Notes: generated by a model not told the origin, from the letters alone. 64,000 bases of DNA from IMGVR_UViG_3300020473_000010:124001-188000, one strand, 5' to 3'; positions 1,839 to 60,094 are shown, counted from the first letter of the stretch. Numbers and translations are program-made.

Positions 1839-1913
1839 ATTTCCACGATATTTGCACCCTTAAAGTGCCCTTCTATAATTATGGAAGTCCAGAGAACCCT
1901 ACAAATTTGAAAT

Positions 1914-2237
1914 TTATATCATTTTTAAAAGACCAAGCGCAATTCCCATTGCGAACTGTACAACCATAAATATGGTAACCGCTTTGGTTTTAAACATTTT
2001 CAGGTGTTCTATGTCGTTTTTCAGTTCTTGCATTTGGACTGGAGATACAACATCATCAATCCTTTCTTTCCATTTTACAAGCTCTTGCACTTTATCTTCT
2101 CTTGCCTGAATTAAAGCAATTTCCTGTTTTAATTCAGTAACCTGCTGTTGCAATTGTTGAATTCCTAATGCGAGAGTTTCTAATTCTTTTAAAACTAATT
2201 TAGAATATTCTCCCCACCCATTTTCGCCAGACGCCAT
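1914..2237 (-). CDS. coiled-coil protein with C-terminal transmembrane helix (possible lysis/membrane protein)
   Basis: heptad-rich core, hydrophobic C-terminus AVTIFMVVQFAMGIALGLL, AAGGAG SD, late-type motif at 2307-2314. Confidence 0.7.
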   Translation of the reverse strand: MASGENGWGEYSKLVLKELETLALGIQQLQQQVTELKQEIALIQAREDKVQELVKWKERIDDVVSPVQMQELKNDIEHLKMFKTKAVTIFMVVQFAMGIALGLLKMI

Positions 2238-2315
2238 CTTAGTCTCCTTTCACTAACTCGTGATCTGAAAAGTTTCAAACTAAAAACAACACTGACAAAC
2301 TTAACCATAAGTATG

Positions 2316-3038
2316 TTAAAGAGACGGAATATTCGGAAGATTTTTAAGCTGACGATAACTGTCAATAGATGAAGGCCATAAAGAATTTGCAATGACGAGG
2401 CAAGCCTCTGCTACTCTTTGGATTTCCCATTGTGCACCACTATGGGTTCTAAGGTTAATAAATTTAATTAAATTATTTAGATTGCAAGTTCCGTAATATT
2501 CGGTATACATATTTTGGGGCAAAACTCCGCGGGCTTGTTCACGGCATACACCAGCTTTCATTAAGTCGTTATACAATTTTACAGACGCTTGATTATGTTG
2601 ACAAACAATTGTTGATGCCTTTAGTCCAAATTCAGTATCTGCAAGATCTGGTACCATAACTGGATCTATTAAGCTCTCCGTGTTTGAGGCTTGACGATTA
2701 CTTTTATGCTGCGTTCTAAAAGACTTTGGTTCATAAAACCTTAGATTTTCAGCAGTGTAGCGACGACTAATTTCATTATAAGACCAAGTACGATGACGAT
2801 GGTGCTGACTCCGAACAAACAAAGGAACAACAAAACGGAATGTAACCACATTATGCTCAAGCGTTGAAGTGTGTTGATGTTTAATAAGATATTTAACCAA
2901 TTTTTCATCTTTCTCATCCATTGATTCTTTTTGTTTTCCAAAAGATACTCTTGCTGCATTAACAATTGTAATATCTTCTCCCATGTGTTGAACATATTCA
3001 ACGCAACCAATTCCATCTTTATATAAATCTATTTTCAC
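2316..3038 (-). CDS. thyX: flavin-dependent thymidylate synthase
   Basis: NAARVSF, HTSTLEH, RHRTWSYNEISRRY (RHRx7SxR), EQARGVLP, AQWEI. Confidence 0.95.
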   Translation of the reverse strand: MKIDLYKDGIGCVEYVQHMGEDITIVNAARVSFGKQKESMDEKDEKLVKYLIKHQHTSTLEHNVVTFRFVVPLFVRSQHHRHRTWSYNEISRRYTAENLRFYEPKSFRTQHKSNRQASNTESLIDPVMVPDLADTEFGLKASTIVCQHNQASVKLYNDLMKAGVCREQARGVLPQNMYTEYYGTCNLNNLIKFINLRTHSGAQWEIQRVAEACLVIANSLWPSSIDSYRQLKNLPNIPSL

Positions 3039-3163
3039 ATTTCCTCCTTTGGGAGAGTTTTATCATGAATCCAAATAGCTAATTTTTTCAAACCAAGCAA
3101 ATTACATACTTCCATCAAAGGGTGTCCAAATATATTATGGATAGTATATTTAAATTTTTTCAT
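3035..3163 (-). CDS. 42-aa hypothetical protein (not in ORF track)
   Basis: MKKFKYTIHNIFGHPLMEVCNLLGLKKLAIWIHDKTLPKEEM; 4-nt overlaps with both neighbours. Confidence 0.65.
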   Translation of the reverse strand: MKKFKYTIHNIFGHPLMEVCNLLGLKKLAIWIHDKTLPKEEM

Positions 3164-4026: not shown

Positions 4027-5001
4027 CTAATAATTCTTAATTAAAACTTCAATTGAATTTGCGCCAGTTCCATGGTTGTGCCGGCCGGCAGTATATTTTA
4101 CTTTGTGATATTTGCAACTAAAATCATCATTAAATTTATCAGCAAACCAACCCTGGGTTATTGTACCCTGATCGGCAACCCAGTTATTTGGAAAAACCTC
4201 TCTGTTACTTAGAGCGACAAGACATTCGGCTTTATGCGCGTCGTTTAAAAAATCACACAAACGGATTTGATCGGTATCACTAAAAACTCCTGCAGAATTA
4301 TATTTCGCGAAAGATCGCCTATATGGAGGATCTGCATAAAACCAATTTCCTTTCCCGAAAAAAGCTTGGGTTTTTTCAAAATCTCCAGACATAAGAATAC
4401 ATGTATCAATAAACTCTGCAAACTTTTTTAATTTTGATATATCAAATAATTTCCCCGGGTGTTTCCAGGTCATTAACCCTGCTGGAGAAGCATAGCGAAA
4501 ATTAAAGTTAGATGACGTTTGCCAAATTCCGTTAAACCCTGTCTGTAATAAATAAAACAAAGCTGCAGCTTGTTCTGTTGGGCTCATAGAATATGGATGA
4601 AGAGCATACTGGTTCCTTAAATCGTAATAATATTTTTTCCTATCGGCAGGTGTTGATTGATTTGCATAACCTTTTAAAACATGATCTAGATACTCTTTTT
4701 CAAAAGTATTATAATGAGCCTTTTTCATTCCTTGGTACATTATTATAAGTTCTTCACAACCTTCATTAAGAACAATGTTTGTATTTGGATAATTTTTCTT
4801 TACCCACTGAGCTACGCACCCAGAGCCGGCAAACATATCAATGAATAGATCTGGTTCTTCATTAGGAAAAAAACCGGACAGGTGGTATTTTTTAAACATT
4901 CTGTTTTTACCACCTGCCCATTTAAAAGGCGGTCTATCTGATTTTATAATATTTTTAATCTGAACCGAAGTATTCGTCTTCAGGTAATCCCAAGTCTTCA
5001 T
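4027..5001 (-). CDS. Dam-family (D12 class) DNA N6-adenine methyltransferase
   Basis: PFKWAGGK, DMFAGSG, GFNG, YADPPY; GGAG SD supports a start at 5001 overlapping the glutamine synthetase end. Confidence 0.9.
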   Translation of the reverse strand: MKTWDYLKTNTSVQIKNIIKSDRPPFKWAGGKNRMFKKYHLSGFFPNEEPDLFIDMFAGSGCVAQWVKKNYPNTNIVLNEGCEELIIMYQGMKKAHYNTFEKEYLDHVLKGYANQSTPADRKKYYYDLRNQYALHPYSMSPTEQAAALFYLLQTGFNGIWQTSSNFNFRYASPAGLMTWKHPGKLFDISKLKKFAEFIDTCILMSGDFEKTQAFFGKGNWFYADPPYRRSFAKYNSAGVFSDTDQIRLCDFLNDAHKAECLVALSNREVFPNNWVADQGTITQGWFADKFNDDFSCKYHKVKYTAGRHNHGTGANSIEVLIKNY

Positions 5002-6013
5002 ATGTCGTTGTCTCCGTAATAAGATATGCCACGACATATGGATCTATATTGGATGCCGGGCGTCTATCTTCAATATACCCTTTCCAATCATTTTGTTCAA
5101 CACTATTTGGGATTCTTATTGATGCTCCACGGTCGCCTACACCATATGAAAATTTACTAATATGCTGAGTTTCATGTTGGCCTGTAAGTCTTTTGTGGTT
5201 ATCTTGACCGTACCCTTGGATATGTTCGTTATGGCGCTGGTGAAACTTATCCATTAACTGAAGCATTTTATCCTTTGACCAATTTTTCCTCATATCTTTA
5301 GTACTAAAATTTGTGTGGCAGCCGCTTCCGTTCCAGTCTCCCGTGACAGGTTTTGGAGTAATATCTATGTCCCAACCTTGTTTTTCAGCTAGTCGATATA
5401 AGAGATATCTTGACATCCATAAGTCATCACATGCTTTGAGTGTATCTTTTGCGAAACACTGATATTCCCATTGTCCTACAGCTACCTCTGCATTAATACC
5501 GGTTAACTCTATTCCCATTGTTAGACACCAATGCAGGTGGCTTTGCACAAACTCTCTACCGACGACTTGGTTTCCACCGACTCCACAATAATATAACCCT
5601 TGAGGTCGAGGATATCCACCTGTTGGAAACCCAAGAGGGGCAAAGTCTTTTGTAATAAAATATTCTTGTTCAAATCCCCACCAAAATTTTTGAGATTTTG
5701 TGTTGTTGTAAATATCTTTTAATTTTGCACGAGTATTTGTTTCGTGGGGAGTTCCGTCGGGATTTAATACTTCACAAAAAACATAAACAGTGTTTGTTCC
5801 GTCGTTATAACACCGAACTGGTTTTAAAAGACATTCTGATGAAGATCCTGGAGCTTGTTGGGTTGATGACCCATCAAAATTCCATACCGGCAAATCTTCC
5901 GGTTTTGGAAACGTATCTTCTAATTCCATTACCTTTAGTTTAGACCGAAGATTTGGGGTTTCATACCCGTCTAACCAAATATATTCTAACCAAACTTTAT
6001 CACTCATTTTCAT
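4955..6013 (-). CDS. glutamine synthetase type II
   Basis: EYIWLDG, WNFDGSSTQQAPG, GFEQEY, PQGLYYCGVG, INAEVAVGQWEYQ, DWNGSGCHTNFS, RLTGQHET, RGASIRIP, GYIEDRRPASNIDPY; ~350 aa GSII size. Confidence 0.95.
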   Translation of the reverse strand: MKMSDKVWLEYIWLDGYETPNLRSKLKVMELEDTFPKPEDLPVWNFDGSSTQQAPGSSSECLLKPVRCYNDGTNTVYVFCEVLNPDGTPHETNTRAKLKDIYNNTKSQKFWWGFEQEYFITKDFAPLGFPTGGYPRPQGLYYCGVGGNQVVGREFVQSHLHWCLTMGIELTGINAEVAVGQWEYQCFAKDTLKACDDLWMSRYLLYRLAEKQGWDIDITPKPVTGDWNGSGCHTNFSTKDMRKNWSKDKMLQLMDKFHQRHNEHIQGYGQDNHKRLTGQHETQHISKFSYGVGDRGASIRIPNSVEQNDWKGYIEDRRPASNIDPYVVAYLITETTTYEDLGLPEDEYFGSD

Positions 6014-6419
6014 TCCTTTTTATTTTATTGTGAACGTGAGGTGCTATTGGAACTGGTTCTCCATCTCCATCAATCCTCACAAAAGTCATTATGCAATCGC
6101 AAATTAATTTTTGAGTACCATTATAAACGCTGTGTCTTCTAGCTTCTAGAGCAATTTGTACTGAAGTTTTTCCTATTTTCACAACTTTCCCATACACTTT
6201 AATTATTTGCCCAGGTCTAGAAGGTGCTGTAAATGATATATCAGAGATGTGTCTTGTCACAACCCTTCCTGTGTCTGCTACTTGAGCAGCAAGAGCCGCT
6301 CCAGCTTCATCAAGCCAAGCTAACATTACTCCGCCAAATAAATTTCCATGAGTTCCCACATCTTTTGTTTTGCATATATGTGTAGAAATTAATTGATGTT
6401 CATACCAGTGAAGAGGCAT
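6000..6419 (-). CDS. hotdog-fold acyl-CoA thioesterase (YciA-like)
   Basis: DVGTHGNLFGGVMLAWLDEAG, VVKIGKTS, TFVRIDGDGEPVPI. Confidence 0.85.
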   Translation of the reverse strand: MPLHWYEHQLISTHICKTKDVGTHGNLFGGVMLAWLDEAGAALAAQVADTGRVVTRHISDISFTAPSRPGQIIKVYGKVVKIGKTSVQIALEARRHSVYNGTQKLICDCIMTFVRIDGDGEPVPIAPHVHNKIKRNENE

Positions 6420-6422
6420 TAA

Positions 6423-7322
6423 TTATCCCTTTAATTGCTCGAGCATTTCTGCTATATCTAATCCACCGACGTCGATTTTTCTTTTCGAACAATGATAATG
6501 GCTCATAAACCCTCTAAAAGAACCTTTGGCGCATTCGGGGTCATAAGCCCATTTCGTAGATGGCGCCTCTAGAGGAATTCCGCATCCTTCATGGACTGCT
6601 TTCCATAAGGCTTTTAATGCCTCGAGTTGCTCTGGATAAAACCAAGTAAACGTATCTAATTCTTTATTTTGCGCTAATGCACCGGTCATTAATGGACGCT
6701 TTTTTCCAAGGTTTTTTAAATACCATCCTTGGTATTTTTCATAATATGCATTAGATATTTCTACACCAATAGAATATTTGTTAACATTTCTATTTCCTGC
6801 ATGCCAACAAGAATCATTTAAATCGTGTAACTGAATGATTGATCCATCATTGTCTATACAGAAGTGCACAGAGACCCCACGTTTCGCGAGAACCTTTGCG
6901 CAACTCATACTACTTAGGCAAACATCCCAATGGTTTACAAATGACTTTATGGTGCGTTTACGGCTGTTCTTAGTAACGCCAGTACTGATTGGATAAGGAA
7001 ACCCAGGATCTTTGAAAGTATGGACTTTATCTGAAGGCCAGTCAATTTTAATAGGGGTGTCTCTCCACCAAATTACATCTGAAGAATCTGTAACCCACCC
7101 TGTTTTTTCTAGATCTCTTTTTGCCTCTTGATCTGAGTTTATATGTCTAAATGTTCCTGGCCCACAAAGACCATCTGCTGTCAATTTTCTAGATTTTTGA
7201 TATTTCCTAATTGCAGCTGTAAGCTTGTTGTCAAAAAGTTTGTGGCCGGGAATAAACCAATTAGGTTCCCAGCCAAGTTTTGAAGCCGAAGCTTCATTAT
7301 AAAATTCTCTATCGATAGCCAT
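6423..7322 (-). CDS. endolysin: peptidoglycan-binding domain plus N-acetylmuramoyl-L-alanine amidase (Amidase_2)
   Basis: AAIRKYQ...LTADGLCGPGT; NHWD, SVHFCID, WHAG...NKYSIGVEI, SHYH...KIDVG. Confidence 0.85.
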   Translation of the reverse strand: MAIDREFYNEASASKLGWEPNWFIPGHKLFDNKLTAAIRKYQKSRKLTADGLCGPGTFRHINSDQEAKRDLEKTGWVTDSSDVIWWRDTPIKIDWPSDKVHTFKDPGFPYPISTGVTKNSRKRTIKSFVNHWDVCLSSMSCAKVLAKRGVSVHFCIDNDGSIIQLHDLNDSCWHAGNRNVNKYSIGVEISNAYYEKYQGWYLKNLGKKRPLMTGALAQNKELDTFTWFYPEQLEALKALWKAVHEGCGIPLEAPSTKWAYDPECAKGSFRGFMSHYHCSKRKIDVGGLDIAEMLEQLKG

Positions 7323-7334
7323 TAGTTTTCTCCT

Positions 7335-7952
7335 CTAACTCTCCTCTGGAATTGCTAGATTTATATCAACAGATACATCAACTTGTAAAATTGGCATGCC
7401 TATTTTATCAGCGATTCCGAGTTTTTTAGCTTTCTTTGGTGTGACAAACCAATCTGCTCTGCCTCGTCTTTGGACTTCTTTATAAAAATAATCACGAGGT
7501 TTCTTACAGTTGTCTGATAGAATCTCATAAATCTTTTTATTTAACCTTTTTGTTTCTTTAGCTGAAGCTTGGATTTCTTCATTTTTCCCCCAAGCTCCAC
7601 TAGATACATCATGTATCATCAATGTTGCTTCAGAGGTAATAAACCTTAACCCTTCTGTTCCACAGGAAAAGAGGATTACTCCACAACTCATTGCTTTTCC
7701 TTCTACTATAGTTGCAACCGGTAAGGTGGATGATTTGATAGCAGAAATCATGCTCATCAATGAATATACTTGCCCGCCATAGCTGTCAATAACAACTGGG
7801 ATAACTGACTGCCCTGTATTTTGAGCTAATGCCATTTTTGCAGCGAATTCATCGGCAGATTGTTCATCGAATTTATTAACCCTAATAATAACTGGATTAT
7901 GCCTTAATTCTAGTTCTTTAATCTTGGGATCCATATTTGTTAACCAATGCAT
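7335..7952 (-). CDS. ClpP-like serine protease (S14)
   Basis: IDSYGG, VEGKAMSCG (Ser), LMIHDVS (His), DWFVTPKKAKKLGIADKI (Asp). Confidence 0.85.
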   Translation of the reverse strand: MHWLTNMDPKIKELELRHNPVIIRVNKFDEQSADEFAAKMALAQNTGQSVIPVVIDSYGGQVYSLMSMISAIKSSTLPVATIVEGKAMSCGVILFSCGTEGLRFITSEATLMIHDVSSGAWGKNEEIQASAKETKRLNKKIYEILSDNCKKPRDYFYKEVQRRGRADWFVTPKKAKKLGIADKIGMPILQVDVSVDINLAIPEES

Positions 7953-7961
7953 TTTTTCTCC

Positions 7962-11878: not shown

Positions 11879-11891
11879 TTTGACTCCGTTT

Positions 11892-12866: not shown

Positions 12867-12875
12867 GGTACTCCT

Positions 12876-14072: not shown

Positions 14073-14104
14073 TTAAACTTACCTCTTAGTTTATCTTCAT
14101 AGTA

Positions 14105-14133
14105 AAATTACGCAATTTTTTTCATTTTTACAA
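14105..14133 (-). promoter_or_regulatory. sigma70-like promoter for recA operon
   Basis: TTGTAA-17 nt-TAATTT directly after a terminator. Confidence 0.55.
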
Positions 14134-14134
14134 T

Positions 14135-14166
14135 AAAAAATGGGGGGGGATTTTCGTCCCCCCCCT
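14135..14166 (-). terminator. intrinsic terminator after SSB gene
   Basis: G8A-CGAAAA-TC8 hairpin followed by ATTTTTT. Confidence 0.85.
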
Positions 14167-15469: not shown

Positions 15470-15534
15470 TATAATCTCCTCTTTTAAGTCTTAGTATAAC
15501 TATTAATTATCTTCAAAGTAGGGGATTTTCATAT

Positions 15535-29481: not shown

Positions 29482-29556
29482 TTAACGATCCCAAATACAA
29501 AAAAGACTCACTAGATAAATATCTGTGAGCAGAAAATTCCTTAATATTAGTTAATA

Positions 29557-34225: not shown

Positions 34226-34302
34226 TATTTCTCCATAACTTTTTTTTAACGAAATTAATTTTTTTAACTAAACTGAACTGATACTAATAAGTATGCATGA
34301 AT

Positions 34303-34919: not shown

Positions 34920-34963
34920 TTTTTAACTCCTGTCAATATGCTTTATAATAACTATTACGTTCC

Positions 34964-39565: not shown

Positions 39566-39596
39566 AATTTAAGCTCCTATATCTGTTTCATAAGTA

Positions 39597-42500
39597 TTAT
39601 TCAAAAGCAACACCCGCATTAGTAATGATGAAATCTATTGAAATAAATTCAATTGCTCTTGTCGGGACAACAACGATTTTACCATTTAAACGGTTTTCTT
39701 CTCTATCTTGTTCTGTATTATTTGTATCATCCATGATTACCTTGAATGATTCTATTCCAGCCTGAGCTTGAATAAGCGCAAGTCTTGGGGCGGCGAGATT
39801 AATAAATCTTTGCCTTGTTTCGGGGGTGTTTTGCTCAAAAAGCACGAGATTAGCAATCTCAATAATTTGTCTTTTAACTTCAAGCAATAATCTTCTCACA
39901 TTTACACGATCGAGCGCGGATTTTGTCATTTGAAGTGTTTTTTGTCCAAAGATTACAAATCCACCATCTGGGAATGTAGCAATTGGATTAATTCTAGATT
40001 CATAAAGTGTATCTCTATCAGCCGATGACAATCTTACCTTGACATTTTCAACAAACTCAAGTCCGCCGCGGTTGAATCCTGCAGGAGCAAACCATGGATA
40101 TGACACAGAGTCGTTGTATCCTAAGGCTCCTAATGCAGCAATCGATGGAGGCACTAGGACGCGACGATTGTTGACTGGATCAGTAATATAGACATCAGGG
40201 AAATAAGTCGCTGTATAATTGTTGTCAAAGACTCTTCCTTCCAGAGATTCTGCAGTTTGATCAACATCAGGGACAGCAGAGGAAGCATCAATAAATAATC
40301 GATTACCATCTTCATCATAAGATGGAACATCCATAAGATACATTGCCATAGAATAATCTCTTGTTCTATTCGAAGCATGGTTCGTAATATAAGGATCTCT
40401 AATATTTGGAACCGCTAATAGATTTGTATTCACTGTCATAGGATCTGTCATGATTTCGATTGCTTTTCGATATGATGCAACGATGTTATTATGTTTTCCA
40501 GCGCCGCTTAAGAGAGCGTCATGAGAACCAGAAACTCCTAATCCGCCAGTTATATCATTTCCAGCTTTTCCACCGGATGCATTTTCTGTTGATGCAGATT
40601 GGTCATTTAATCTCGAGATGTCTCCATCAAGAATATTAAGACCATCAAAGCCACCATGGAAAATATTATTAAACTTTGCAAACTGTGTAAATCTATTAAA
40701 CACAACTGAAGAAGAGTTTAACAATGTCGCCAAAGTAATTCTATCAGCATCCGATACTGGATCTTTAACCGTATACGTTTTTGCGTCAACAACACCGTTT
40801 CTCAAATAGGCGGATTCTAACATATGCTCAGCAGCTGAACCGGTAATCTGAGTTATATGACCGGTTGTTGTTAACTCGTTATATAAAGCAACTTTTGCTA
40901 ACGAGAACTTATTGTTGTTGAATGTGTCTGCTTCTGCTTCATCATGAAGAGTGTCTAGCTTTGCAATTCCATGGAATTTTGTATATGCTTTTACTAAAGG
41001 ATTAGGTTTTTGAGTTACATTTGCGTTAAGAACATCTGTTCCAACTTTTTCAAACATTACTCCCCAATAAAGCCGTGAATCAATTCTTTCCTTGGATCCT
41101 TTAGCACCAACGTATGTTGGTGTTGAAGAAATAGCACTCTTAGATGTTTTAAACCTCATTGGAAGAGGAGGAAGGATTGCACCTTTATGTTCGTCTGTAA
41201 TGCTAGCTCCAGCTAATCTCTCGCTTGATATTCCGGAAGAAGCATAGATTCCTGTAGGGTTAGTTTTGAGTACCGGAACACCTTTGAACCCAAAAGGCAG
41301 AGCTTCATGGGGGACTTCATCGCGATAAACAGCATCGTTGATTACAACCCTTATTCTTAAAGACCGGTTGGGATATTTCCCAGAGATGACTAATCTCCTT
41401 TCATCTTCATCGGCAGCATCAAAATTGTATCGTACTTTCTTATCTCCAATTACTCTTCCAATAAATCTATCATCGTTTGGATCAAGGGTTAAAAGAGGGT
41501 ATCTTTCTAAGATTTCTGGATTTTGGTCGGTATCTGACCAGTTTCTCAATTGTACCTCGAAAGAACCATACTTGTTATTTGGATCAGTTGACGCTCTAAG
41601 GTTTGCAATAGAGATTTTGAATTTTGAATTTGCGTATTCACCATCACTTAAACATTCAAAATGGAACAAATTAAATTCAGTTTTACCAAAAGGTTGTGAA
41701 ATGAATTTTGAAGTTTTTGGTGCTTGATATCTTGTATCAAATCTTCCAAAAAGTTCTCTAAAATTATCTCCATTTGCTCCGTTGTTTAATGATCCGGATA
41801 CAATAGCAACTTTGTCTACAGTTGTTTTGACTGTAGCTACGCTATCTTCAACAGGAAGATCTAAATAAAGTAAATGTTGCTCTCTTTGAAACAATTTAGG
41901 ATCTGTATTTAATACTTTTCCAATATAGTGTACGTCTTCAGGGTCCAAACTAGCTGAAAAGACTTTTGATTTAGCTAGTTCTTCAGAGCTTCCACCAAAC
42001 CCAGTATCTTTTGAGCATAGGATTAATTTAAATGCCTTTGACATATGACCAGTGGCTGTATCTAAATTATAACGTGCTGTGCAATTTGCTGGATGGTTTG
42101 CAGTTCCGGAAAGATCTACATTATAATCTTCAGCGTAGAAGACGCTTCCGGTAGTTGTAAAAAGTACAGCTCTAATAAGGCCGATATCGTCTGTTGTGGG
42201 GGTGCTACTATTTTCTCTTACATCTGGAAAAGAATCATTATCAGTAAAGATTGGGAACCCGGCGTCAGCGTTAGCCGGAACTGTATGGATTGCTGTAATA
42301 AATTGTACATTTCCACCGCACTCTTTGTTTGTAACACCTAATAAGTGACCTACGTTAATATTGTTGTTGGCGCCATTTGTTCCAGTGCTCATTCCAATCT
42401 TGAAACCAGCATTTTTTACAAACCCATATTCAATTGTATTTGTAATATCTGATTCTGTGGCATTAGCTCCTGCGCCGAGGACGCGCATAAAAGTTACTGC

Positions 42501-42734: not shown

Positions 42735-42773
42735 AATGCTTCTCCTAATATTCTCATATTAAATATGTTGTTC

Positions 42774-45809: not shown

Positions 45810-45877
45810 CAAAATTCTCCGAGCATCCACTTATAAATATGGAGGAGAAAGGCATAAGTCCTTTACCAGCTTTGGAA

Positions 45878-46301: not shown

Positions 46302-46362
46302 AATTATTTCTCCTATATGTTCATCTATTTAATAATAAGTATGCTGCTGATGAAAGTAAAAC

Positions 46363-47822: not shown

Positions 47823-47879
47823 CTATAAGTATGCAGTATTATATCCAATTTATAAAGATTGTAACGTTTTTTCCGGAAA

Positions 47880-47910: not shown

Positions 47911-47933
47911 ACATCGTAAGGATGAAACCTTTA

Positions 47934-51672: not shown

Positions 51673-51727
51673 ATTTTAAACTCCTAAATCAACACTGATA
51701 AGTATTCACCATCTTAGCAAAAATCCT

Positions 51728-52984: not shown

Positions 52985-53302
52985 TTAAATGTTTTTAATG
53001 ATTCTTTTACGTAACTTAGCTTTTCTTTCCTGTAACTTTTTCATTTTTTTAACTAAATTCTTGTGTTGTTTGGTTAATTTATTCTCTTGAATTTTTAACG
53101 CTTTAATAAAATCTATATCTTGCTCTAGAGCGTCTCCGTTAGCCCATCCTTCTTCTTTTGCTTTTACATCTTCAACAGAAGCGATTTTTCCAGATAAACT
53201 TTCTTTTTGCAGTTTTTTGGCTTCCGCCAAAACTAAAGCACGAAGCGCTGAGCTACTAATTTTTCTTGTAGATCTACGTCTAGTATTTGCTCTTTTTTTC
53301 AT
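52985..53302 (-). CDS. hypothetical basic coiled-coil head-region protein (start 53302)
   Basis: AAGGAG SD and late motif 53334-53341 lie within the ORF-track 5' extension. Confidence 0.7.
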   Translation of the reverse strand: MKKRANTRRRSTRKISSSALRALVLAEAKKLQKESLSGKIASVEDVKAKEEGWANGDALEQDIDFIKALKIQENKLTKQHKNLVKKMKKLQERKAKLRKRIIKNI

Positions 53303-53363
53303 AACTGAAATCTCCTTAATTTGCACTACATTATTAAGTATGCAGTACCTCATTAGTAATTAT

Positions 53364-53774: not shown

Positions 53775-54317
53775 TTATCCTACGTCTGAGCCGGACAATA
53801 CAGGCATGGCATTGCGATGAATATTTGTTAATCCAACCATTAACGTACAGCCGGCTCTGTTGTTGTTGTCAATATATATTTCTGAACACTTTATTGGAAT
53901 TGCTTGAGTATAGGCGCCATTTTTAATATTCATTCTACTAGTCATGGTCGTAAGTCGGGTGGGAGTATGTATCCCGGGATCGCCGTCGGTGAAATTCGAA
54001 GAGATAGATGCCAAGGAAAAATCTGTGGCGGCGGTTTGCTTAGGTTTTGAAGCTGCTCCACTCGGAGTGAAAGAAATAAAGACATCCTGGGAGTGGGTAC
54101 AGGCGTTGGTTATCATAATCCATTGAGTTACATATGGAAACTGAATCCTTACTGGGTTAGAAGATGCTGGTATTTCATAAACAGCGGGATAACCTGCTAC
54201 TTGATACTCTGGTGCAAAATTTATATGAGGGGCAGGGTGGTTCATTGCTGCAGCGGTGGACGCGTTTGAGGTCGCCTGGTTCTTTTTGTCATAGTCTCTA
54301 TAATAATTATTACCCAT
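53775..54317 (-). CDS. hypothetical structural protein
   Basis: EYQVAGYP, IQFPYVTQWIMITN; coupled to protease stop. Confidence 0.7.
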   Translation of the reverse strand: MGNNYYRDYDKKNQATSNASTAAAMNHPAPHINFAPEYQVAGYPAVYEIPASSNPVRIQFPYVTQWIMITNACTHSQDVFISFTPSGAASKPKQTAATDFSLASISSNFTDGDPGIHTPTRLTTMTSRMNIKNGAYTQAIPIKCSEIYIDNNNRAGCTLMVGLTNIHRNAMPVLSGSDVG

Positions 54318-54931
54318 TATTCATTACTCCAATCTAGTATGTCATTAAATATTCTATCAACTCTATCTGATTTATTAAACACTTCTTTTAATTCTTTTTC
54401 AGAAATTTCTCTTCCTTCTTTCATCATAAATGCGCCTGGTGTTGAAGGTTCAGATACAAAGTCCCAACAAATTAGCTGAAAATCATCCTGCACTACTTGA
54501 TGATCACCTTCTCGTCTAGTTGAACCAACACCTCTAGAAGAAATGCCTAAAGTAACGCCAGAATCAACGAGAGACTTAAGTATTTTACCGCTAGGGGTAT
54601 CTAAAATCTCAACTGTACCGTAACATATATCTCCATCCATATAGGCCTCACGGACAATATGGGATGAATTTTTAAGTTCTACTACAGATGAATCCGGATG
54701 ATCTAATTCTCCAAGTGCCCTATTTTCGGCAATAAATTTTTGATAGTTTCGGACTTCTCTTTCTAAAATTTCTATAGGATATATTCTTCCATTCTGATTT
54801 AAAGTATTTGCTTTTTGGAGAATACCTTTCATTGTATATCTCCCTCCGGAAGAATCTCTTTCCTGAAGCATTTTTTCTCTATCAAATTCCCATGCGCTGA
54901 ATTCAGTTAATAATTTCATAGTCTTTTTCAT
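54317..54931 (-). CDS. prohead core protease (T4 gp21-like)
   Basis: NQNGRIYP, RALGELDHP, SHIV, LGISSRGVGS, WDFVSEPSTPGA. Confidence 0.95.
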   Translation of the reverse strand: MKKTMKLLTEFSAWEFDREKMLQERDSSGGRYTMKGILQKANTLNQNGRIYPIEILEREVRNYQKFIAENRALGELDHPDSSVVELKNSSHIVREAYMDGDICYGTVEILDTPSGKILKSLVDSGVTLGISSRGVGSTRREGDHQVVQDDFQLICWDFVSEPSTPGAFMMKEGREISEKELKEVFNKSDRVDRIFNDILDWSNE

Positions 54932-55779
54932 CGGTCGTCTCCCATAAGTTCGCGCTGAAGCTGGCAGACAGTTAAAAACTTTGATATGGTTTCATCGTTA
55001 ATTTCAGTAATGTTTAGGTCTGAAACTTCTTTTAGAACCGGTTCTATTTTACTTTTTACAAAATCATTATCACATGCTGCTTGAAATCTTGTTAATTCAT
55101 TGATGGTTTTGTCTTTAATAGATTTTAACGTTGATTCAAATCTGCTGGGGTTTTTATCCATGGAAAAAATATATTCTTTAATTAAAGTCTGTTGTTGATC
55201 ATTAAACCTAGTACCATATTTTTTATTGAACTTTTCTGTCATAATTTTAAGTACTAGTTTATCAATGGTTCCATCATGTTGTTCTTCTAAATTAATTAAG
55301 TTCTCTTCTCTCAAAAGCATTTCATGGACCTTGGTTTCGTATTCTACTATTCTACCAAAATCCCCTCGTTGGCGCCAGTCGTTTAACAAAGTTTGGACAG
55401 TGGCGAAATCTTTATATTCTGAAATGTGTCTTTTATAAAAATTTGGATCCTTAAGTTTATAATTTATTTCTTTGATAAGTTTAGATTTTTCTCTTTCCAA
55501 ACGGCGAGTATTGTGACTTCTCGCACCATATTTTGCCTCTTCGATTATCTTTGTTGCTAAAGATCCATCTTTGATTCTTGTTGTTACTAGTGCGTTGAAA
55601 AGTCTGTGCTCTTTATAAAGCTCTGTTCCTTGTTGGAAATATTTTTTTATTATCATTTTTGCAGTTGCAGCAGTTTGTTCATCATTGTTAACTAACGATT
55701 CCGAAATAACTCTTAACAATTGCTCATAGATAATCCCGACATTTCGTTTTTTATTGTGGGATCTTTTAGTCATTGTCAT
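54928..55779 (-). CDS. hypothetical protein between portal and protease
   Basis: HNKKRNVGIIYEQL; helical 283 aa. Confidence 0.75.
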   Translation of the reverse strand: MTMTKRSHNKKRNVGIIYEQLLRVISESLVNNDEQTAATAKMIIKKYFQQGTELYKEHRLFNALVTTRIKDGSLATKIIEEAKYGARSHNTRRLEREKSKLIKEINYKLKDPNFYKRHISEYKDFATVQTLLNDWRQRGDFGRIVEYETKVHEMLLREENLINLEEQHDGTIDKLVLKIMTEKFNKKYGTRFNDQQQTLIKEYIFSMDKNPSRFESTLKSIKDKTINELTRFQAACDNDFVKSKIEPVLKEVSDLNITEINDETISKFLTVCQLQRELMGDDR

Positions 55780-57793
55780 CCTCCAAATCTAGATCAAATT
55801 CCTCGTCTAAATCATAGTTTTCATTAATTATCTTTTTAATACCTAATTTTCCTTGCATTTTCTCTAACATGCCTTTCATTTCAAAGGACATAGCGGGGCG
55901 ATACCCAGAATATTCCTGTGTTTCTTCTTCTAGTCCTATAATATAATCAGCCAAAGATTGTTTTTTACCTTCTCCGAAAGAATTTCCGAATGGGTTTGAT
56001 AAGAAATCTTCATCATAAGGTTTTCGTAAAGTATCTTGAGAACGTCCAGCTTTTCCAGTTAATACCATTTTCTTAAGGTCTGGCATATGAGTAGAACCAG
56101 GTCCTGATCTCACTTTTCTATCACGCTTCTTACGAAGCGGGGTACCCCAAACATTCTTTTTAGATGGGGATGATGAAGGTTTTATACCATCTCCAAGTTC
56201 TCCTTGGATTTTTTCTAAATCTATTTCATCCAAATCTTCTTCATCAAAAGATTGTTCTTCATCTAATTCTAATAGTCCATCTGATTCTGTGGCCTGTATG
56301 GGATTTCCATCTAGAATTTGATCGTTTGAAGGAAGATCACCTGCGAATAATCCTCCGCCTTCATCTCCTCCAGCCTCATCCCCGCCACCTTCTTCTTCAG
56401 CTCCGGCAGCTTCTAGTTCTGTATCATTAAGTTTATCTTCTATTTTTTCTCTTTGCAATCTAAGAATTTCGTCTCTACTGAACCCAAAAATATTTTTATA
56501 AATCCAATTTCTACTAACCATTCCTTCGGGGGCGCCTCCTGCAATCTCAAATCTAGTCCGAATTAGTTCTAGTTTTTGTTGTTGCGCTAAACTAGAAGGG
56601 TTTGAAAGCTGTAATCCAAAATCTAGTAAATCTTCACTTTCAAATCCATGGGCAAAAAGGTGGATCATTGCAATCTTGTTTAATTCTGCTACAATTGTTT
56701 TTTGGATCCTAGATATTGTTCTAGAAAACCTAATATCTTCTTGTGCAAGAGTCGCTTTTGCACCGATATCTTCATCGTATCCTAAATACGCTTTTGGAAT
56801 TTTGAGAGCAGCAAATAATTTTTTCTGGACATATTCAACATCTTCAATAGCTGATGTGTTTTGTCCACCCGCTAGATTTTCTATTCTTGTCCCAGAATCT
56901 CCACCTCTAACCGGTATAAAATAATCTTCGTCGACCGATAAGGGATTATACCTTAAATCGACGTTTCCGGTACCCTTTTGTACGACCATGTTTTTCTTGA
57001 GGCTAGTTTTTGCTTGTTCTAAATAGTTTGCTACATCTTCCGGGGGCACGTTCCCCACATCAATATAGAATACACGCCGCTCAGGACTACGAATGACACG
57101 ATATACAAGCATTGCATCTTCAATAAGAATAAGTTGCCGCCAAATGCGTCGTGCAGACTCAAGTACAGAAGAACCGTAAGGAAGGAAAGCATCATTGCCA
57201 AGCAAACGAAAATGAGTAATTTGCCAATTTTCGAGAACTTGGTTTCCTTGGGTGATCCACCTAAAACGAACTGCAGAAGGGTCACTAGAATCATATCCTT
57301 CTTCTCTTTCCATTTCTGTAATTGGGATGGGGTAGGCATTAATTACTCCAAATTCAGGGTGAACATCGTTAAATAAGAAGAAATCACCGTATTTACACAA
57401 ATTTCTTATCCACATTACTAAATTAAAATTAATATTTAATGTATCATAAAAAAGAGTTTCTAAAAGTTCTCTTATTTTTCGATTATCGGAAGTTATATGA
57501 AGGCACCTACCTTCTACATCGGGGCTAACACACTCTTCGGCATATATGTCTAATGCAGAAGCAATTTCAGGAGTTGATTCCATTTCGCTAAAATCAGAAT
57601 ATCTAGCCATCCTATCAAAAGTTCCGTACGCAGACAAGGTCGAATTATATACATCACTATGGTGCTTCTTAAACAGTTCAACTGCAGAAGATGCATTTTT
57701 ATCTGATTTTGTGTAATTTCTGACCTTCCTTTTTATAGTTGGGCCGGACCTAAACAATTTTGTTAAGCGCCTAAATAGTGACTCATCAGCCAT
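55766..57793 (-). CDS. portal protein (T4 gp20-like)
   Basis: PEIASALDI, CKYGDFF, LIEDAMLVYRVIRSPERRVFYIDVGN, EDYFIPVRG, LFAALKIP, EDIRF. Confidence 0.95.
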   Translation of the reverse strand: MADESLFRRLTKLFRSGPTIKRKVRNYTKSDKNASSAVELFKKHHSDVYNSTLSAYGTFDRMARYSDFSEMESTPEIASALDIYAEECVSPDVEGRCLHITSDNRKIRELLETLFYDTLNINFNLVMWIRNLCKYGDFFLFNDVHPEFGVINAYPIPITEMEREEGYDSSDPSAVRFRWITQGNQVLENWQITHFRLLGNDAFLPYGSSVLESARRIWRQLILIEDAMLVYRVIRSPERRVFYIDVGNVPPEDVANYLEQAKTSLKKNMVVQKGTGNVDLRYNPLSVDEDYFIPVRGGDSGTRIENLAGGQNTSAIEDVEYVQKKLFAALKIPKAYLGYDEDIGAKATLAQEDIRFSRTISRIQKTIVAELNKIAMIHLFAHGFESEDLLDFGLQLSNPSSLAQQQKLELIRTRFEIAGGAPEGMVSRNWIYKNIFGFSRDEILRLQREKIEDKLNDTELEAAGAEEEGGGDEAGGDEGGGLFAGDLPSNDQILDGNPIQATESDGLLELDEEQSFDEEDLDEIDLEKIQGELGDGIKPSSSPSKKNVWGTPLRKKRDRKVRSGPGSTHMPDLKKMVLTGKAGRSQDTLRKPYDEDFLSNPFGNSFGEGKKQSLADYIIGLEEETQEYSGYRPAMSFEMKGMLEKMQGKLGIKKIINENYDLDEEFDLDLEDDND

Positions 57794-57832
57794 AGATTTT
57801 CACCTCGTAAACATATATTAAGTATGTTGAAA

Positions 57833-59416
57833 CTATTTTACTAACCAAGTAAAATCTGTATATGGGTTATTGCTGCCTGGCCAAGATTTTTTCTTGCCTT
57901 TAGTTGGTTCATTTGTTTGAATCGTTGCATCGGGGATTACGGTATCCTCTATTTTTGTTGAATTTACTGCAAATGCTGCAAGCATTGCCGCATTTAAATC
58001 AGTAGAGTGCTTATTAAGTTGGGGGGATGTGTCGTATAACCAAACCCCGATAGCTAAAGCCATAATTAGATCATCATTTTGACCTTTTTGGGCTTGGGCT
58101 TTACCGTTTTTCCATACAAACGTCTTTAATTCTTCGTATAAACGACTAGATTTTACCATCACTTGTTTTGTTCGTAAAACTTCTTCTAATTTTGTTAAAA
58201 TCTGGTTTCTTGTTTTTGCATTAGTTTGAAAACCTATCTTCCCTATGTCACCATTCCCATATAAGAAAGCAAATCGGTCTTTTTCTGATTGAAAATAGAG
58301 GTTTCTATAATCCATTTCATTTAATTTCATAACAACTGCATATCCATAAGAATTATTTTCAGGACAAATCAGAGCGTCATTATACCTTCGCCCAGCTTCA
58401 GCCAAAATTTGGGCAAATTTATCCGGGGGGAGTTTTCCTCTATATTCTGCTACAACTGCTGATGCGTCTGTGTCAATAATATGAAAAGTTGAATAATCTG
58501 AAGCATCTCCTCGTGAAACATCGGCTGAAATTATATATTTCTTGCCAGAATGCGGATAATCCCAAACCCAAACGCCCATATCTGGGCCCCATTTATCAAT
58601 AGGGTTGCGAATCCAGCCTCTTAAATATTCAATGTCTTCAACCTGCAGGAAAGTGTCGCCAGAAGCCGCAAAATCGCAGAGTAATTCTTGGGCAATCTGT
58701 TTTTGAGACATATTTTTAGTTTCTTCTTTAAACCACTGATCGTCCCTTTCTGGGTGGACATCCCATGGGAGCTTAATAGCATTAAAGATGTTTTCTCCAT
58801 CTTCAGCTTGTTTCCAGATATCGTAATATTGACCACCAACACCATTTGGAGTAGATAATACAATCGCTCTTCCCCCAGTTGATAGAGTGGGATACAAACC
58901 AGTCCATAAAGTATCAAAATTTCTTACAAACGCTGCTTCGTCTACAATTAACAATGTTAATGCTTCGGATCGACCAGCATCTTCAGAAGTTGGGATAGCC
59001 TTTATTGTTGACCCATTAGAAAATTCAAGAGCTTGCTTATTATTGTTGATAATTGCCGGCAATAATAGCCATTTTGGCATAGATTGAATAACAAATTTTA
59101 CTTTTCTAATAAAATTTTGTGCTACTGATAATTTTGTAGCAATAACTAGAATATTTTTATCTTTGTGGAATATACCAAGCCAGGCAGCGTATGCAGCTGT
59201 AATTGTCGATAAACCTAATTGTCTAGATTTTAATATTACATTAAACCTGTGTTCTACGAAAGCATCAACACAATCATTTTGAAACCCATATGTCTTAAAT
59301 GGAATGGCGCCTTTAATTGGATGTTGGATTTTAACATATCGATTAAAGAAATATTGTGGATTTTTACCACATTTTACTATTTCTTTTACTTGGCGCTGCT
59401 TTTGAGTTACTGACAT
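57833..59416 (-). CDS. terminase large subunit (gp17-like)
   Basis: KSRQLGLST, LIVDEAAF, LSTPNG, ADVSRG..DYS, ENNSYG, DDLIMA. Confidence 0.95.
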   Translation of the reverse strand: MSVTQKQRQVKEIVKCGKNPQYFFNRYVKIQHPIKGAIPFKTYGFQNDCVDAFVEHRFNVILKSRQLGLSTITAAYAAWLGIFHKDKNILVIATKLSVAQNFIRKVKFVIQSMPKWLLLPAIINNNKQALEFSNGSTIKAIPTSEDAGRSEALTLLIVDEAAFVRNFDTLWTGLYPTLSTGGRAIVLSTPNGVGGQYYDIWKQAEDGENIFNAIKLPWDVHPERDDQWFKEETKNMSQKQIAQELLCDFAASGDTFLQVEDIEYLRGWIRNPIDKWGPDMGVWVWDYPHSGKKYIISADVSRGDASDYSTFHIIDTDASAVVAEYRGKLPPDKFAQILAEAGRRYNDALICPENNSYGYAVVMKLNEMDYRNLYFQSEKDRFAFLYGNGDIGKIGFQTNAKTRNQILTKLEEVLRTKQVMVKSSRLYEELKTFVWKNGKAQAQKGQNDDLIMALAIGVWLYDTSPQLNKHSTDLNAAMLAAFAVNSTKIEDTVIPDATIQTNEPTKGKKKSWPGSNNPYTDFTWLVK

Positions 59417-59820
59417 TATACATAGAACTCATAATTGATTATACGTGAGTATCTAGCACGGACAAGAGAAACATTGTGGCTTATATGGTCTACAGTGGGC
59501 TCAGCTGCCGGCAGTTCTTTACACTTTAAAGACTGGCCTGATAAGATTTTAAACTCTTTTTTTATTTCGTTAATTTTATCCCCAATCATTTTTATACTTG
59601 TTTTATCAAGGTCTTTTCTTTGGTCTTTCATTCCATGGCGTGGGTTGAAATTAACAATAGTTTCAAATTTAATTTCTAATACGGGATTTAATTCTTCTTC
59701 TGACCCAGTTGTTCCAGCTAAAAAGGCTTTGACTCCGTATCCGGAATCCCTAATTGAAGAACGACCGAAAGTTGAATCAATTAATGATCCTAAAATATTT
59801 ATATGCTCTGAATTAATCAT
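59416..59820 (-). CDS. hypothetical protein upstream of terminase
   Basis: AGGAG SD, late motif 59843-59850, coupled to terL. Confidence 0.7.
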   Translation of the reverse strand: MINSEHINILGSLIDSTFGRSSIRDSGYGVKAFLAGTTGSEEELNPVLEIKFETIVNFNPRHGMKDQRKDLDKTSIKMIGDKINEIKKEFKILSGQSLKCKELPAAEPTVDHISHNVSLVRARYSRIINYEFYV

Positions 59821-60094
59821 TATTACTCTCCTGAGATTTAATATAATTATGTTGTTTAGAGGTGTTTTTCTCTGAATTATCGGGGCGCCATCCAGTGGCC
59901 CACTTTTCTTTGTTTGGTATTCGATACGTATCGTTACAGTCTAGACAACATCCAAAAGATTTAAAATTTGATATATCAGACATATCTCTAAAAGAAAACC
60001 CGCAAATTGGGCAATCTAACGGAGTTGGTGACCAATCTTTTGGGATAATTATATTAATATTGTCTATAGATTTGTATGTTTTTAGATCATCCAT
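59813..60094 (-). CDS. small zinc-finger protein
   Basis: CPICG...CCLDC...GWRP. Confidence 0.65.
   Translation of the reverse strand: MDDLKTYKSIDNINIIIPKDWSPTPLDCPICGFSFRDMSDISNFKSFGCCLDCNDTYRIPNKEKWATGWRPDNSEKNTSKQHNYIKSQESNND

What the first reader, a model, noticed from the sequence alone, without database searches (positions are those of the whole stretch)
1875..59850. Late-promoter motif oriented opposite to the T4 TATAAATA box
Seen: 16 copies of an 8-mer reading ATA(C/T/G/A)TTA(T/A) on the coding strand, often CATACTTAT. They precede portal, scaffold, decoration, neck, both sheaths, tube, chaperone, tape measure and the pre-terminase gene, with no recognisable -35. At 45832-45839 the template strand reads exactly TATAAATA. 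Established: T4 gp55 promoters are TATAAATA on the coding strand. Inference: a distinct phage late sigma or activator with a near-palindromic, apparently inverted recognition element. The factor is not encoded in this window.
Basis: partly seen in the sequence, partly recalled or inferred. Interest (0 to 1): 0.6.

Follow-up and report, generated by a model that had tools for sequence, protein, structure and literature searches.

The report
Variant T4-type late promoter box
A short A/T box (ATAnTTA) sits just ahead of the virion genes of this marine jumbo phage and hundreds of its relatives; it is most likely their version of the phage T4 late promoter, pointing the same way as T4's box, and read by a distant gp55-like sigma factor encoded elsewhere in the genome.

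Summary
The motif is real. In this window, part of a 288.7-kb far-T4-like marine phage, ATAnTTA(W) lies on the coding (-) strand 21-34 nt before the start codons of portal, both sheaths, tube, adaptor and tape measure. It lies 62-99 nt before two further virion-block genes. No -35 element is conserved.

Its raw count is at chance level. The signal is in strand, position and conservation:
- Boxes precede 10 of 11 structural-gene upstream regions against 3 of 16 others.
- Counts in the -48..-13 interval exceed shuffles (z 4.5 genome-wide, z 26 in 80 related loci).
- It is the top de novo motif in the relatives.

The genome also has a separate bipartite promoter class, never found on the same genes.

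Outside the window lies a 241-aa sigma whose N-terminal domain best matches T4 gp55 (Z 11.2). Its -12 pocket tyrosine is conserved, while the -9/-8 pocket residues differ. It also carries an extra sigma-4-like domain.

The "inverted" reading is not supported: xATAnTTA aligns co-directionally with TATAAATA. No transcription start data, gp33 or clamp were found. I rate it a new variant of a known kind.

The parts
59843..59850 (-). Box ATAATTAT, 23 nt before the ATG (59820) of the 134-aa ORF that overlaps and precedes TerL (57833-59416)
57818..57825 (-). Box ATACTTAA, 25 nt before the portal ATG (gene 55766-57793)
   Evidence: A box at the same place is present in about 50 of 77 related loci.
54345..54352 (-). 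Box ATATTTAA inside the 3' end of the prohead protease gene, 28 nt before the 180-aa gene (53775-54317)
53334..53341 (-). Box ATACTTAA, 32 nt before an internal ATG with an SD (about 53302) of the ORF 52985-53353
51698..51705 (-). Box ATACTTAT, 26 nt before the 576-aa gene (49942-51672). The MCP (47934-49898) follows this gene and has no box of its own.
47825..47832 (-). Box ATACTTAT (full CATACTTAT), 99 nt before the 135-aa gene (47319-47726)
   Evidence: The leader shows no unusual fold.
46335..46342 (-). Box ATACTTAT (full CATACTTAT), 34 nt before the 106-aa gene (45981-46301)
45833..45840 (-). Box ATATTTAT, 21 nt before the ATG at 45812 of the head-tail adaptor-like gene. The opposite strand reads TATAAATA at 45832-45839.
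42759..42766 (-). Box ATATTTAA, 25 nt before the tail sheath paralogue of 1045 aa (39597-42734)
39590..39597 (-). Box ATACTTAT, 25 nt before the tail sheath paralogue of 1533 aa (34964-39565)
34948..34955 (-). Box ATAGTTAT, 29 nt before the tail tube gene (34431-34919)
34287..34294 (-). Box ATACTTAT (full CATACTTAT), 62 nt before the baseplate-hub-like gene (33365-34225)
29515..29522 (-). Box ATATTTAT, 34 nt before the GTG start of the tape-measure-like gene (24631-29481)
15496..15510 (-). Two overlapping boxes (ATAATTAA and ATAGTTAT), 34 and 27 nt before the 122-aa gene (15101-15469). Function of the gene is unknown.
2307..2314 (-). Box ATACTTAT (full CATACTTAT), 70 nt before the 107-aa gene (1914-2237). 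Weaker candidate because of the distance.
1875..1882 (-). Palindromic ATAATTAT, 133 nt before the 257-aa gene (969-1742). Probably not a working box; a sigma-70-type TTGTAA-N17-TATAAT lies closer to that gene.

Best explanation
ATAnTTA, often (C/A)ATAnTTA(T/A), is the -10-type promoter box for the virion (late) genes of this far-T4-like marine jumbo phage and its clade.

Proposed mechanism:
- The box is read on the non-template (coding) strand, in the direction of the genes.
- It needs no -35 element, as with T4 late promoters.
- The N-terminal domain of that sigma is gp55-like.
- Aligned with T4's TATAAATA (-13 to -6), the box keeps A-12, T-11, A-10, T-7 and A-6. It replaces A-9 A-8 by n-T.
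- Transcription would then start about 6 nt after the box, giving 5' leaders of about 15-30 nt that hold the Shine-Dalgarno site.

Shown:
- The box, its strand, its position and its conservation.
- Its association with structural genes.
- The sigma fold and the residue pattern.
- Co-occurrence of box and sigma in relatives.

Inferred:
- That the box is a promoter.
- That this sigma reads it.
- The register of the alignment with T4.
- The 'late' timing.
For: Position and strand:
- ATANTTA start positions peak at -41..-25 before start codons genome-wide.
- In 80 related loci, 174 of 336 occurrences fall at -40..-21.
- Dinucleotide shuffles of the -48..-13 segments give 40 observed against 19.9 +/- 4.4 in this genome, and 198 against 37.9 +/- 6.1 in relatives. 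The opposite strand holds only 16 and 49.

Association with virion genes:
- In the window, boxes precede 10 of 11 structural-gene upstream regions against 3 of 16 others (Fisher p = 3e-4).
- Replication and nucleotide-metabolism genes lack well-placed boxes.

Conservation:
- Unbiased EM recovers ATAnTTA as the top motif in relatives, at about 27% of gene starts.
- A box persists before the portal gene while its flanks diverge.

Architecture and contrast with other promoters:
- No -35 element is conserved. Positions +6 to +8 after the box are purine-rich.
- A separate bipartite promoter class (A-tract, cTGTGTAGa, N14-15, TAAATTATAT) occupies other genes and never the same ones.

The sigma:
- It matches phrog_234 (late sigma) at E = 8e-5.
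- BLASTP against T4 gp55 aligns in register.
- The AF2 model has pLDDT 81.
- 7d7c_F (T4 gp55) scores Z 11.2, rmsd 4.0 A, 121 of 137 residues, 19% identity. It is the best single-domain hit.
- Pocket residues, taken from PMC7892883 section 8: Y97, the -12 pocket residue, is the invariant Y99 here. The -9 and -8 pocket residues H95 and T99 are invariant F97 and N101.

Co-occurrence:
- By tblastn this sigma is found only in Flavobacterium phage immuto, Microcystis phage Mel-JY01 and one uncultured phage.
- Immuto and Mel-JY01 also carry oriented TATTTAT boxes ahead of their head genes.
- Both have no Sigma70_r2 match in their complete records.
Against: - No transcription start data exist. The only RNA runs found hold contigs of relatives' capsid genes.
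- The box has only six specified A/T positions. Its raw count is at chance level, and more than half of the copies lie inside genes.
- Well-placed boxes also occur before genes of unknown or non-structural function in the 0-124 kb part of the genome.
- Sequence similarity to gp55 is marginal: E about 1e-3 to 1e-4 over about 45 residues, hhalign probability is low, and a PDB profile search found nothing.
- The sigma carries a sigma-4-like C-terminal domain, yet no -35 motif is seen.
- No gp33, gp45, clamp loader or beta clamp was detected.
- This genome and five large relatives also encode a sigma-70-family protein that could read cATAnT as a -10 element.
Confidence: 0.6

Rival explanations
1. 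The box is a -10 element (c-12 A-11 T-10 A-9 n-8 T-7) read by the phage's own sigma-70-family protein. That protein is 245 aa, lies at genome 94,111-94,848, and has regions 1.2, 2 and 3 but no region 4.2. It could therefore work without a -35 element.
For: - Sigma70_r2, r1_2 and r3 hits with no region 4.
- The A and T that sigma-70-type factors flip out can be placed on the box.
- This sigma is present in all five large related contigs.
Against: - The complete genomes of Mel-JY01 and immuto keep oriented boxes ahead of head genes but have no Sigma70_r2 match.
- The bipartite class A promoters fit a sigma-70-type reader better. They have a -35-like (T/G)TGTA(G/A), a spacer of about 17 bp and a TA(A/C)AT(T) -10. 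One of them precedes this sigma gene itself.
- No T-12 or TG extension is conserved in the box.
Confidence: 0.13
2. The box is not a promoter but an RNA-level or compositional feature of translation-initiation regions. It could be an AU-rich leader element, a processing site or a translational enhancer. Or it may simply reflect AT-rich DNA before start codons.
For: - The spacing to the SD and ATG is tight.
- The raw count of the degenerate 8-mer is at chance level.
- The box is low in information.
Against: - Dinucleotide-preserving shuffles of the same upstream segments, and the opposite strand of those segments, hold far fewer boxes.
- Reverse-complement and reversed patterns show no comparable peak.
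- The box is absent before most tightly packed operon-internal genes and before the replication genes. A general translation signal would not show that pattern.
- Exactly four positions of identity are kept while the central base is free, across phages 57-94% identical in portal protein.
Confidence: 0.12
3. One reading: a late factor recognises an element that is the T4 TATAAATA box turned round, so that the T4-like sequence lies on the template strand.
For: - The n = T variant ATATTTAT is the reverse complement of ATAAATAT.
- The + strand at 45832-45839 reads TATAAATA.
- Cultured relatives use TATTTAT.
Against: - The commonest variant before the window's virion genes is ATACTTA. Its complement, TAAGTAT, is not T4-like.
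- Sigma region-2 domains, gp55 included, read the non-template strand directionally (PMC7892883). An inverted box would therefore drive antisense transcription, and no genes lie on that strand.
- A co-directional alignment, xATAnTTA against TATAAATA, keeps 5 of 8 positions and matches the pattern of conserved and changed pocket residues.
- TATAAATA itself is not positioned before genes: 13 copies on the coding strand, of which 1 is well placed.
Confidence: 0.03

Closest known systems
Phage T4 late promoters and the gp55 / gp33 / gp45 late transcription system (reviewed in PMC2988020; structure in PMC7892883)
   Same: - A single short A/T box where a -10 element would sit, with no -35 conservation.
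- Placed shortly before virion genes, including sites inside upstream coding sequence.
- The phage sigma has a gp55-like sigma-R2 domain plus the following helices, and ends in a hydrophobic C-terminal tail.
- The clade shares T4-type portal, capsid, protease, sheath and terminase genes.
   Different: - The consensus is ATAnTTA, not TATAAATA. The two A's that gp55 buries at -9 and -8 are n-T here.
- The sigma is 241 aa and has an added sigma-4-like C-terminal domain.
- No gp33, gp45 or clamp loader was found.
- The replication module is not T4-like for these parts.
Variant late promoter consensus of Aeromonas phage Aeh1 (a/gC at -13/-12; cited in PMC2988020)
   Same: It shows that the late box can drift within the T4 superfamily while the system is kept.
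   Different: Aeh1 changes the upstream edge of the box. Here the core (-9/-8) is changed, and the sigma is far more diverged.
Group 4 (ECF) sigma factors
   Same: Two-domain sigma-2 plus sigma-4 architecture of about 200-240 aa. The top Foldseek and VIA matches over both domains are sigma-H, sigma-E and sigma-W.
   Different: ECF sigmas need a specific -35 element and a GC-containing -10. Here there is no -35 motif, the box is A/T only, and no Pfam sigma domain is detected by sequence.
Phage Mu late transcription using the host beta clamp (PMC12867686, seen)
   Same: It is a precedent for a phage without its own clamp coupling late transcription to the host clamp. That could explain the hydrophobic C-terminal tails seen here.
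   Different: Mu uses the MuC activator with sigma-70. Nothing here was tested for clamp binding.

Membership tests
T4-type late promoter | Consensus TATAAATA on the non-template strand | tested here: not met
   The box is ATAnTTA. TATAAATA occurs 13 times on the coding strand of the genome, and only 1 copy lies 10-45 nt before a start codon.
T4-type late promoter | No conserved -35 element | tested here: met
   Information content is below 0.25 bit at all positions -45..-2 in 58 sites of this genome. No signal appears in the 12 nt upstream of the box (the span examined) at 190 sites of relatives.
T4-type late promoter | Box centred about one helical turn upstream of the transcription start | not testable with these tools
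   No raw RNA reads are available; only metatranscriptome contigs of relatives were found. The box-to-ATG distance of 14-34 nt and the purine enrichment 6-8 nt after the box are compatible with this feature.
T4-type late promoter | Serves virion (late) genes | tested here: met
   In the window, 10 of 11 structural-gene upstream regions have a box against 3 of 16 others, p = 3e-4. Timing of expression was not tested.
T4-type late promoter | gp33 co-activator and gp45 sliding clamp with clamp loader in the genome | tested here: not met
   - T4 gp45 and gp44 proteins and the families PF09116, PF02916 and PF02768 all found nothing.
- The conserved 118-aa neighbour shows no gp33 similarity.
- These are single-sequence or Pfam searches, so distant homologues are not excluded.
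gp55 late sigma family (phrog_234) | Sigma-R2 homology domain followed by a helix-loop-helix | tested here: met
   VIA alignment to 7d7c_F gives Z 11.2, rmsd 4.0 A, 121 of 137 residues. Model residues 16-143 match chain residues 10-146.
gp55 late sigma family (phrog_234) | Significant match to the family profile | tested here: inconclusive
   E = 8e-5 (genome search) and 9e-4 (hmmscan) over about 45 residues only. hhalign against T4 gp55 gives E = 0.0085 with low probability.
gp55 late sigma family (phrog_234) | DNA-pocket residues (N13, L54, R57, F86, H95, Y97, T99, R114 of T4 gp55) | tested here: inconclusive
   L54, F86 and Y97 are kept. R114 becomes K. N13, R57, H95 and T99 are replaced, and F97 and N101 are invariant in the family. 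The mapping rests on an alignment at 19% identity.
gp55 late sigma family (phrog_234) | Single-domain sigma without region 4 | tested here: not met
   Residues 148-231 form a conserved helical domain. It aligns with region 4 of ECF and other sigmas in whole-chain matches.
Sigma-70-type -10 element read by a sigma-70-family protein | The box co-occurs with a sigma-70-family gene across the clade | tested here: not met
   Mel-JY01 and immuto have boxes but no Sigma70_r2 match in their whole records.

The most novel reading that the evidence does not exclude
A very widespread marine clade of far-T4 jumbo phages runs late transcription with an intermediate form between ordinary two-domain sigma factors and T4 gp55. 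More than 500 portal relatives and more than 2,500 sigma homologues were found. In this reading:
- The factor has a gp55-type sigma-2 domain with changed base pockets that reads ATAnTTA.
- It is still fused to a sigma-4-like domain, so no gp33 is needed.
- It works without a -35 element.
- It may be tethered to the host beta clamp through conserved hydrophobic C-terminal tails, ...FDIL on the sigma and ...DDLF..I on its 118-aa neighbour.
Probability: 0.2. Interest if true: 0.65.

Novelty: new variant of a known kind. Interest (0 to 1): 0.42.

Why it matters
It would give a usable late-promoter rule (ATAnTTA, 15-35 nt before the start codon) for annotating operons in an abundant, almost unannotated group of marine phages, including cultured Flavobacterium and Microcystis phages.

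It would also assign a function to a protein now labelled hypothetical in all of them.

The pairing of a changed box (A-9 A-8 to n-T) with changed pocket residues (H95 to F, T99 to N) is a natural specificity swap that could be tested directly against the solved gp55 complex.

The extra sigma-4-like domain bears on how gp55 evolved from ordinary sigma factors.

Tried and rejected
- Nucleotide search of the phage collection found no close relative.
- The raw count of the degenerate 8-mer was tested as evidence and rejected, because it is at chance level.
- The first EM runs were dominated by the Shine-Dalgarno site and by AT-rich mismatch neighbourhoods. These were solved by masking the last 16 nt.
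- T4 gp55 as a single-protein query found nothing in the genome, and phrog_12791 found nothing.
- A PDB sequence-profile search with the sigma alignment gave only spurious designed-protein hits.
- gp33 hypothesis for the 118-aa neighbour: hhalign E = 0.5. The model has pLDDT 68 and only generic helical matches of Mediator Med11/22 type. The protein atlas returned only viral hypothetical clusters. No support.
- Searches for a clamp and clamp loader found nothing.
- RNA evidence: the only runs are marine metatranscriptome contigs covering pieces of relatives' capsid genes at 85-95% identity. They give no 5'-end information.
- Rfam scan of the window gave no hit. The 99-nt leader after the box at 47825 folds no better than shuffles.
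- The 91-aa ORF after the sigma-70-like gene looked like region 4.2 by eye but has no Pfam, PHROG or PDB match.
Full report
WHAT THE WINDOW IS

The window is bases 124,001-188,000 of a single 288,697-bp virus record, 96% complete by CheckV, with 36% G+C. Nearly all genes are on the - strand.

PHROG scans identify the following genes:
- an SbcC/gp46-like nuclease (60087-63218)
- the large terminase (57833-59416)
- the portal (55766-57793)
- the prohead protease (54317-54931)
- the major capsid protein (47934-49898)
- a head-tail adaptor (44631-45830)
- two tandem tail-sheath paralogues (39597-42734 and 34964-39565)
- the tail tube (34431-34919)
- a hub-like protein (33365-34225)
- a tape-measure-like protein (24631-29481)

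The low-coordinate end of the window holds other functions: a gp32-like SSB, RecA/UvsX, a 5'-3' exonuclease, a DnaB-like helicase, ribonucleotide reductase, ClpP, an amidase, glutamine synthetase and a Dam-type methylase.

The closest cultured relatives by portal protein are Microcystis phage Mel-JY01 (42%), Flavobacterium phage immuto (39%) and Rhodothermus phage RM378 (35%), followed by thousands of T4-like phages. The phage is therefore a distant member of the T4 superfamily. IMG/VR holds 506 relatives of the portal.

THE OBSERVATION

ATANTTAW occurs 42 times on the - strand and 20 times on the + strand. CATACTTAT occurs 4 times, against 0.56 expected.

Boxes lie at these distances before start codons:
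- 21-34 nt before the 134-aa ORF ahead of TerL, the portal, the 576-aa gene ahead of the capsid gene, the 106-aa gene, the adaptor (true start probably the ATG at 45812), both sheaths, the tube and the tape measure
- 62 nt before the hub-like gene
- 99 nt before the 135-aa gene

The + strand at 45832-45839 reads TATAAATA.

The overall count of the degenerate 8-mer is not above chance: 62 against 54 +/- 7.6. The case therefore has to rest on other measures.

MORE THAN CHANCE

- Genome-wide, CATANTTA has 29 of its 73 copies in the 5.5% of DNA that is intergenic, and 52 copies lie on the coding strand.
- ATANTTA start positions peak at -41..-25 before start codons. Its reverse complement and its reversed form do not peak there.
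- Dinucleotide-preserving shuffles of the -48..-13 segments give 19.9 +/- 4.4 copies against 40 observed. The opposite strand of the same segments holds 16.
- In the window, a box lies within 100 nt upstream of 10 of 11 structural genes that have an intergenic region, against 3 of 16 other genes (p = 3e-4).
- No position upstream of the box carries information, so there is no -35 element.

CONSERVATION

- In 80 related loci (1.1 Mb, 1,057 gene starts), 174 of 336 ATANTTA occurrences start at -40..-21.
- Shuffles of those loci give 37.9 +/- 6.1 copies against 198 observed (z = 26).
- An EM search seeded only with frequent 7-mers returns ATAnTTA as the best motif, at about 27% of starts.
- Before the portal gene, a box 15-27 nt from the ATG persists in about 50 of 77 loci although the flanks are unalignable. 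More distant relatives show variants such as CTAATTAG.
- In annotated records of cultured relatives, TATTTAT lies 19-49 nt before coding sequences in 7 of 14 copies (Mel-JY01) and 9 of 12 copies (immuto). Those upstream windows make up only 5% of the DNA. The opposite orientation, ATAAATA, does so in 1 of 12 and 2 of 9 copies.

OTHER PROMOTERS IN THE SAME GENOME

The strongest non-SD motif in this genome is a different, bipartite element. It consists of:
- an A-tract
- cTGTGTAGa
- 14-15 nt of spacer
- GTTAAATTATATATGTAA, which is often palindromic

It has about 30 copies. These are confined to 0-124 kb and 280-288 kb, plus the small-ORF island at window positions 31.1 and 32.1 kb. It never sits on a gene that has a box. 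It fits a sigma-70-type layout with a -35-like element, a spacer of about 17 bp and a TAnnnT -10. I take it for the early or middle promoter class.

THE FACTOR

Neither sigma candidate is in the window.

(a) A sigma-70-family protein of 245 aa lies at genome 94,111-94,848. It has regions 1.2, 2 and 3 but no region 4.2.

(b) A 241-aa protein lies at genome 236,461-237,186.
- It is the only place in the genome that rings the gp55 family phrog_234, at E = 8e-5.
- BLASTP against T4 gp55 aligns residues 85-117 with 83-115, in register.
- It has 2,531 homologues, almost all unnamed.
- An AF2 model from 22 homologues has pLDDT 81.
- Foldseek returns sigma factors only.
- In the VIA second look, T4 gp55 (7d7c_F) scores Z 11.2 at rmsd 4.0 A over 121 of its 137 residues. 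It has the highest identity (19%) and the fullest coverage of any single-domain match.
- Residues 148-231 form a second conserved domain. It aligns with region 4 in whole-chain matches to sigma-E and sigma-H.

WHICH SIGMA READS THE BOX

Both sigmas are present in five large related contigs. Two results separate them:
- tblastn finds the gp55-like protein in the phage collection only in immuto, Mel-JY01 and one uncultured phage. Immuto and Mel-JY01 were checked and carry the box.
- The complete Mel-JY01 and immuto records have no Sigma70_r2 match at all.

The box therefore travels with the gp55-like sigma.

ORIENTATION AND REGISTER

According to the gp55 open-complex structure (PMC7892883, section 8):
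- gp55 reads the non-template strand.
- It buries A-12 against Y97.
- It buries A-9 between N13 and H95.
- It buries A-8 against T99.

Written as x-A-T-A-n-T-T-A against T-A-T-A-A-A-T-A, the new box keeps A-12, T-11, A-10, T-7 and A-6, and changes -9/-8 from AA to nT.

In the alignment of the new family with gp55:
- Y97 corresponds to an invariant Y99.
- L54 and F86 are also kept.
- H95 and T99 are replaced by invariant F97 and N101.
- N13 is replaced by T19.

So the pocket for the conserved base is kept, and the pockets for the changed bases are changed. This is an inference from an alignment at 19% identity, not a demonstration. It does explain the data without any inversion.

In this register the start would be the sixth base after the box. 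That position is A in 55% of sites in this genome, and positions +6 to +8 are purine-rich in relatives. T4's own TATAAATA is not positioned before genes here.

The commonest form before the window's virion genes, ATACTTA, has no T4-like complement.

WHAT IS MISSING

- There are no transcription start data. The only public RNA runs found are marine metatranscriptome contigs covering pieces of relatives' capsid genes.
- No gp33 was found. The conserved 118-aa gene next to the sigma has a conserved ...DDLF..I C-terminus but no detectable similarity or informative fold.
- No gp45, clamp loader or beta clamp was found.
- Whether the hydrophobic tail of the sigma (...FDIL / ...YDIF) binds a host clamp is open.
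- 'Late' timing is inferred from gene content only. Well-placed boxes also precede genes of unknown function elsewhere in the genome.

COMPARISON AND VERDICT

In function the box looks like a T4 late promoter: a single A/T box, no -35, ahead of virion genes, with a gp55-type reader. By the membership tests it is not a T4 late promoter in the strict sense:
- The consensus differs.
- gp33 and gp45 were not found.
- The sigma has an extra domain.

The review of T4 late transcription records only near-identical boxes in KVP40, 44RR and S-PM2 and an edge variant in Aeh1 (PMC2988020). No paper in the searchable library describes promoters of immuto or Mel-JY01.

I rate it a new variant of a known kind, of moderate interest. 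My confidence is about 0.8 that it is a promoter element and about 0.6 that it is read by the gp55-like sigma in the register proposed.

Noticed in passing
window about 31070-31126 and 32041-32097 (- strand); about 30 copies genome-wide: There is a second, much more information-rich promoter-like element. It consists of an A-tract, cTGTGTAGa, 14-15 nt of spacer, and GTTAAATTATATATGTAA. The downstream half is often a perfect inverted repeat (TTACAT..ATGTAA). It precedes small-ORF clusters and replication-side genes, and never genes with the ATAnTTA box.
   Followed up: partly
genome 94,111-94,848 (L002:1090-1827, - strand) and the next ORF L002:815-1090: The phage encodes a sigma-70-family protein with regions 1.2, 2 and 3 that stops just after the start of region 4. 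It is preceded by a class A promoter. The overlapping 91-aa ORF looks like a region 4.2 helix-turn-helix by eye, which would suggest a split sigma. It has no Pfam, PHROG or PDB match.
   Followed up: partly
L003:776-1132 (- strand), genome 236,108-236,464: A 118-aa helical protein lies immediately after the gp55-like sigma. The synteny is conserved in three relatives. It has an invariant C-terminal DD(L/I)F..I tail that resembles clamp-binding peptides. No known family or fold was found.
   Followed up: partly
window 34964-39565 and 39597-42734 (- strand): There are two tandem tail-sheath paralogues, of 1533 and 1045 aa. Each has its own box 25 nt upstream. Only their C-terminal 350-450 residues match sheath families, so each carries a large unexplained N-terminal part.
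   Followed up: no
window 47934-49898 (- strand): The major capsid protein is 654 aa, but only residues 390-636 match the T4-type capsid family. There is no box in the 43 nt before it, so it is probably co-transcribed with the 576-aa gene upstream.
   Followed up: no
window 4027-15003 (- strand): This block encodes glutamine synthetase, ClpP, a Dam-type methylase, an amidase, class I/II ribonucleotide reductase with a TSCPD domain, a DnaB-like helicase, a 5'-3' exonuclease, RecA/UvsX and a gp32-like SSB. No T4-type clamp or clamp loader occurs anywhere in the genome.
   Followed up: partly
L002:2112-3083 (- strand), genome about 95,133-96,104: A 323-aa ORF next to the sigma-70-like gene reads like the C-terminal two thirds of a GroEL-type chaperonin. 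This is by eye only.
   Followed up: no
window 47933-48713 and 50709-50955: Marine metatranscriptome contigs from three runs of one study match pieces of the capsid gene and the 576-aa gene. One 209-nt piece of the 576-aa gene matches exactly. The rest, including all capsid pieces, match at about 85-95% identity. This shows that relatives are transcribed in the sea, but says nothing about transcription starts.
   Followed up: yes
L045, L047, L052, L055 and L041-L044, upstream of portal: More distant relatives replace the portal box by other A/T boxes: ATAAATAcTAT or ATAGATATTATTA in one group, and CTAATTAG in another. This hints that the box and its reader co-vary across the clade.
   Followed up: no
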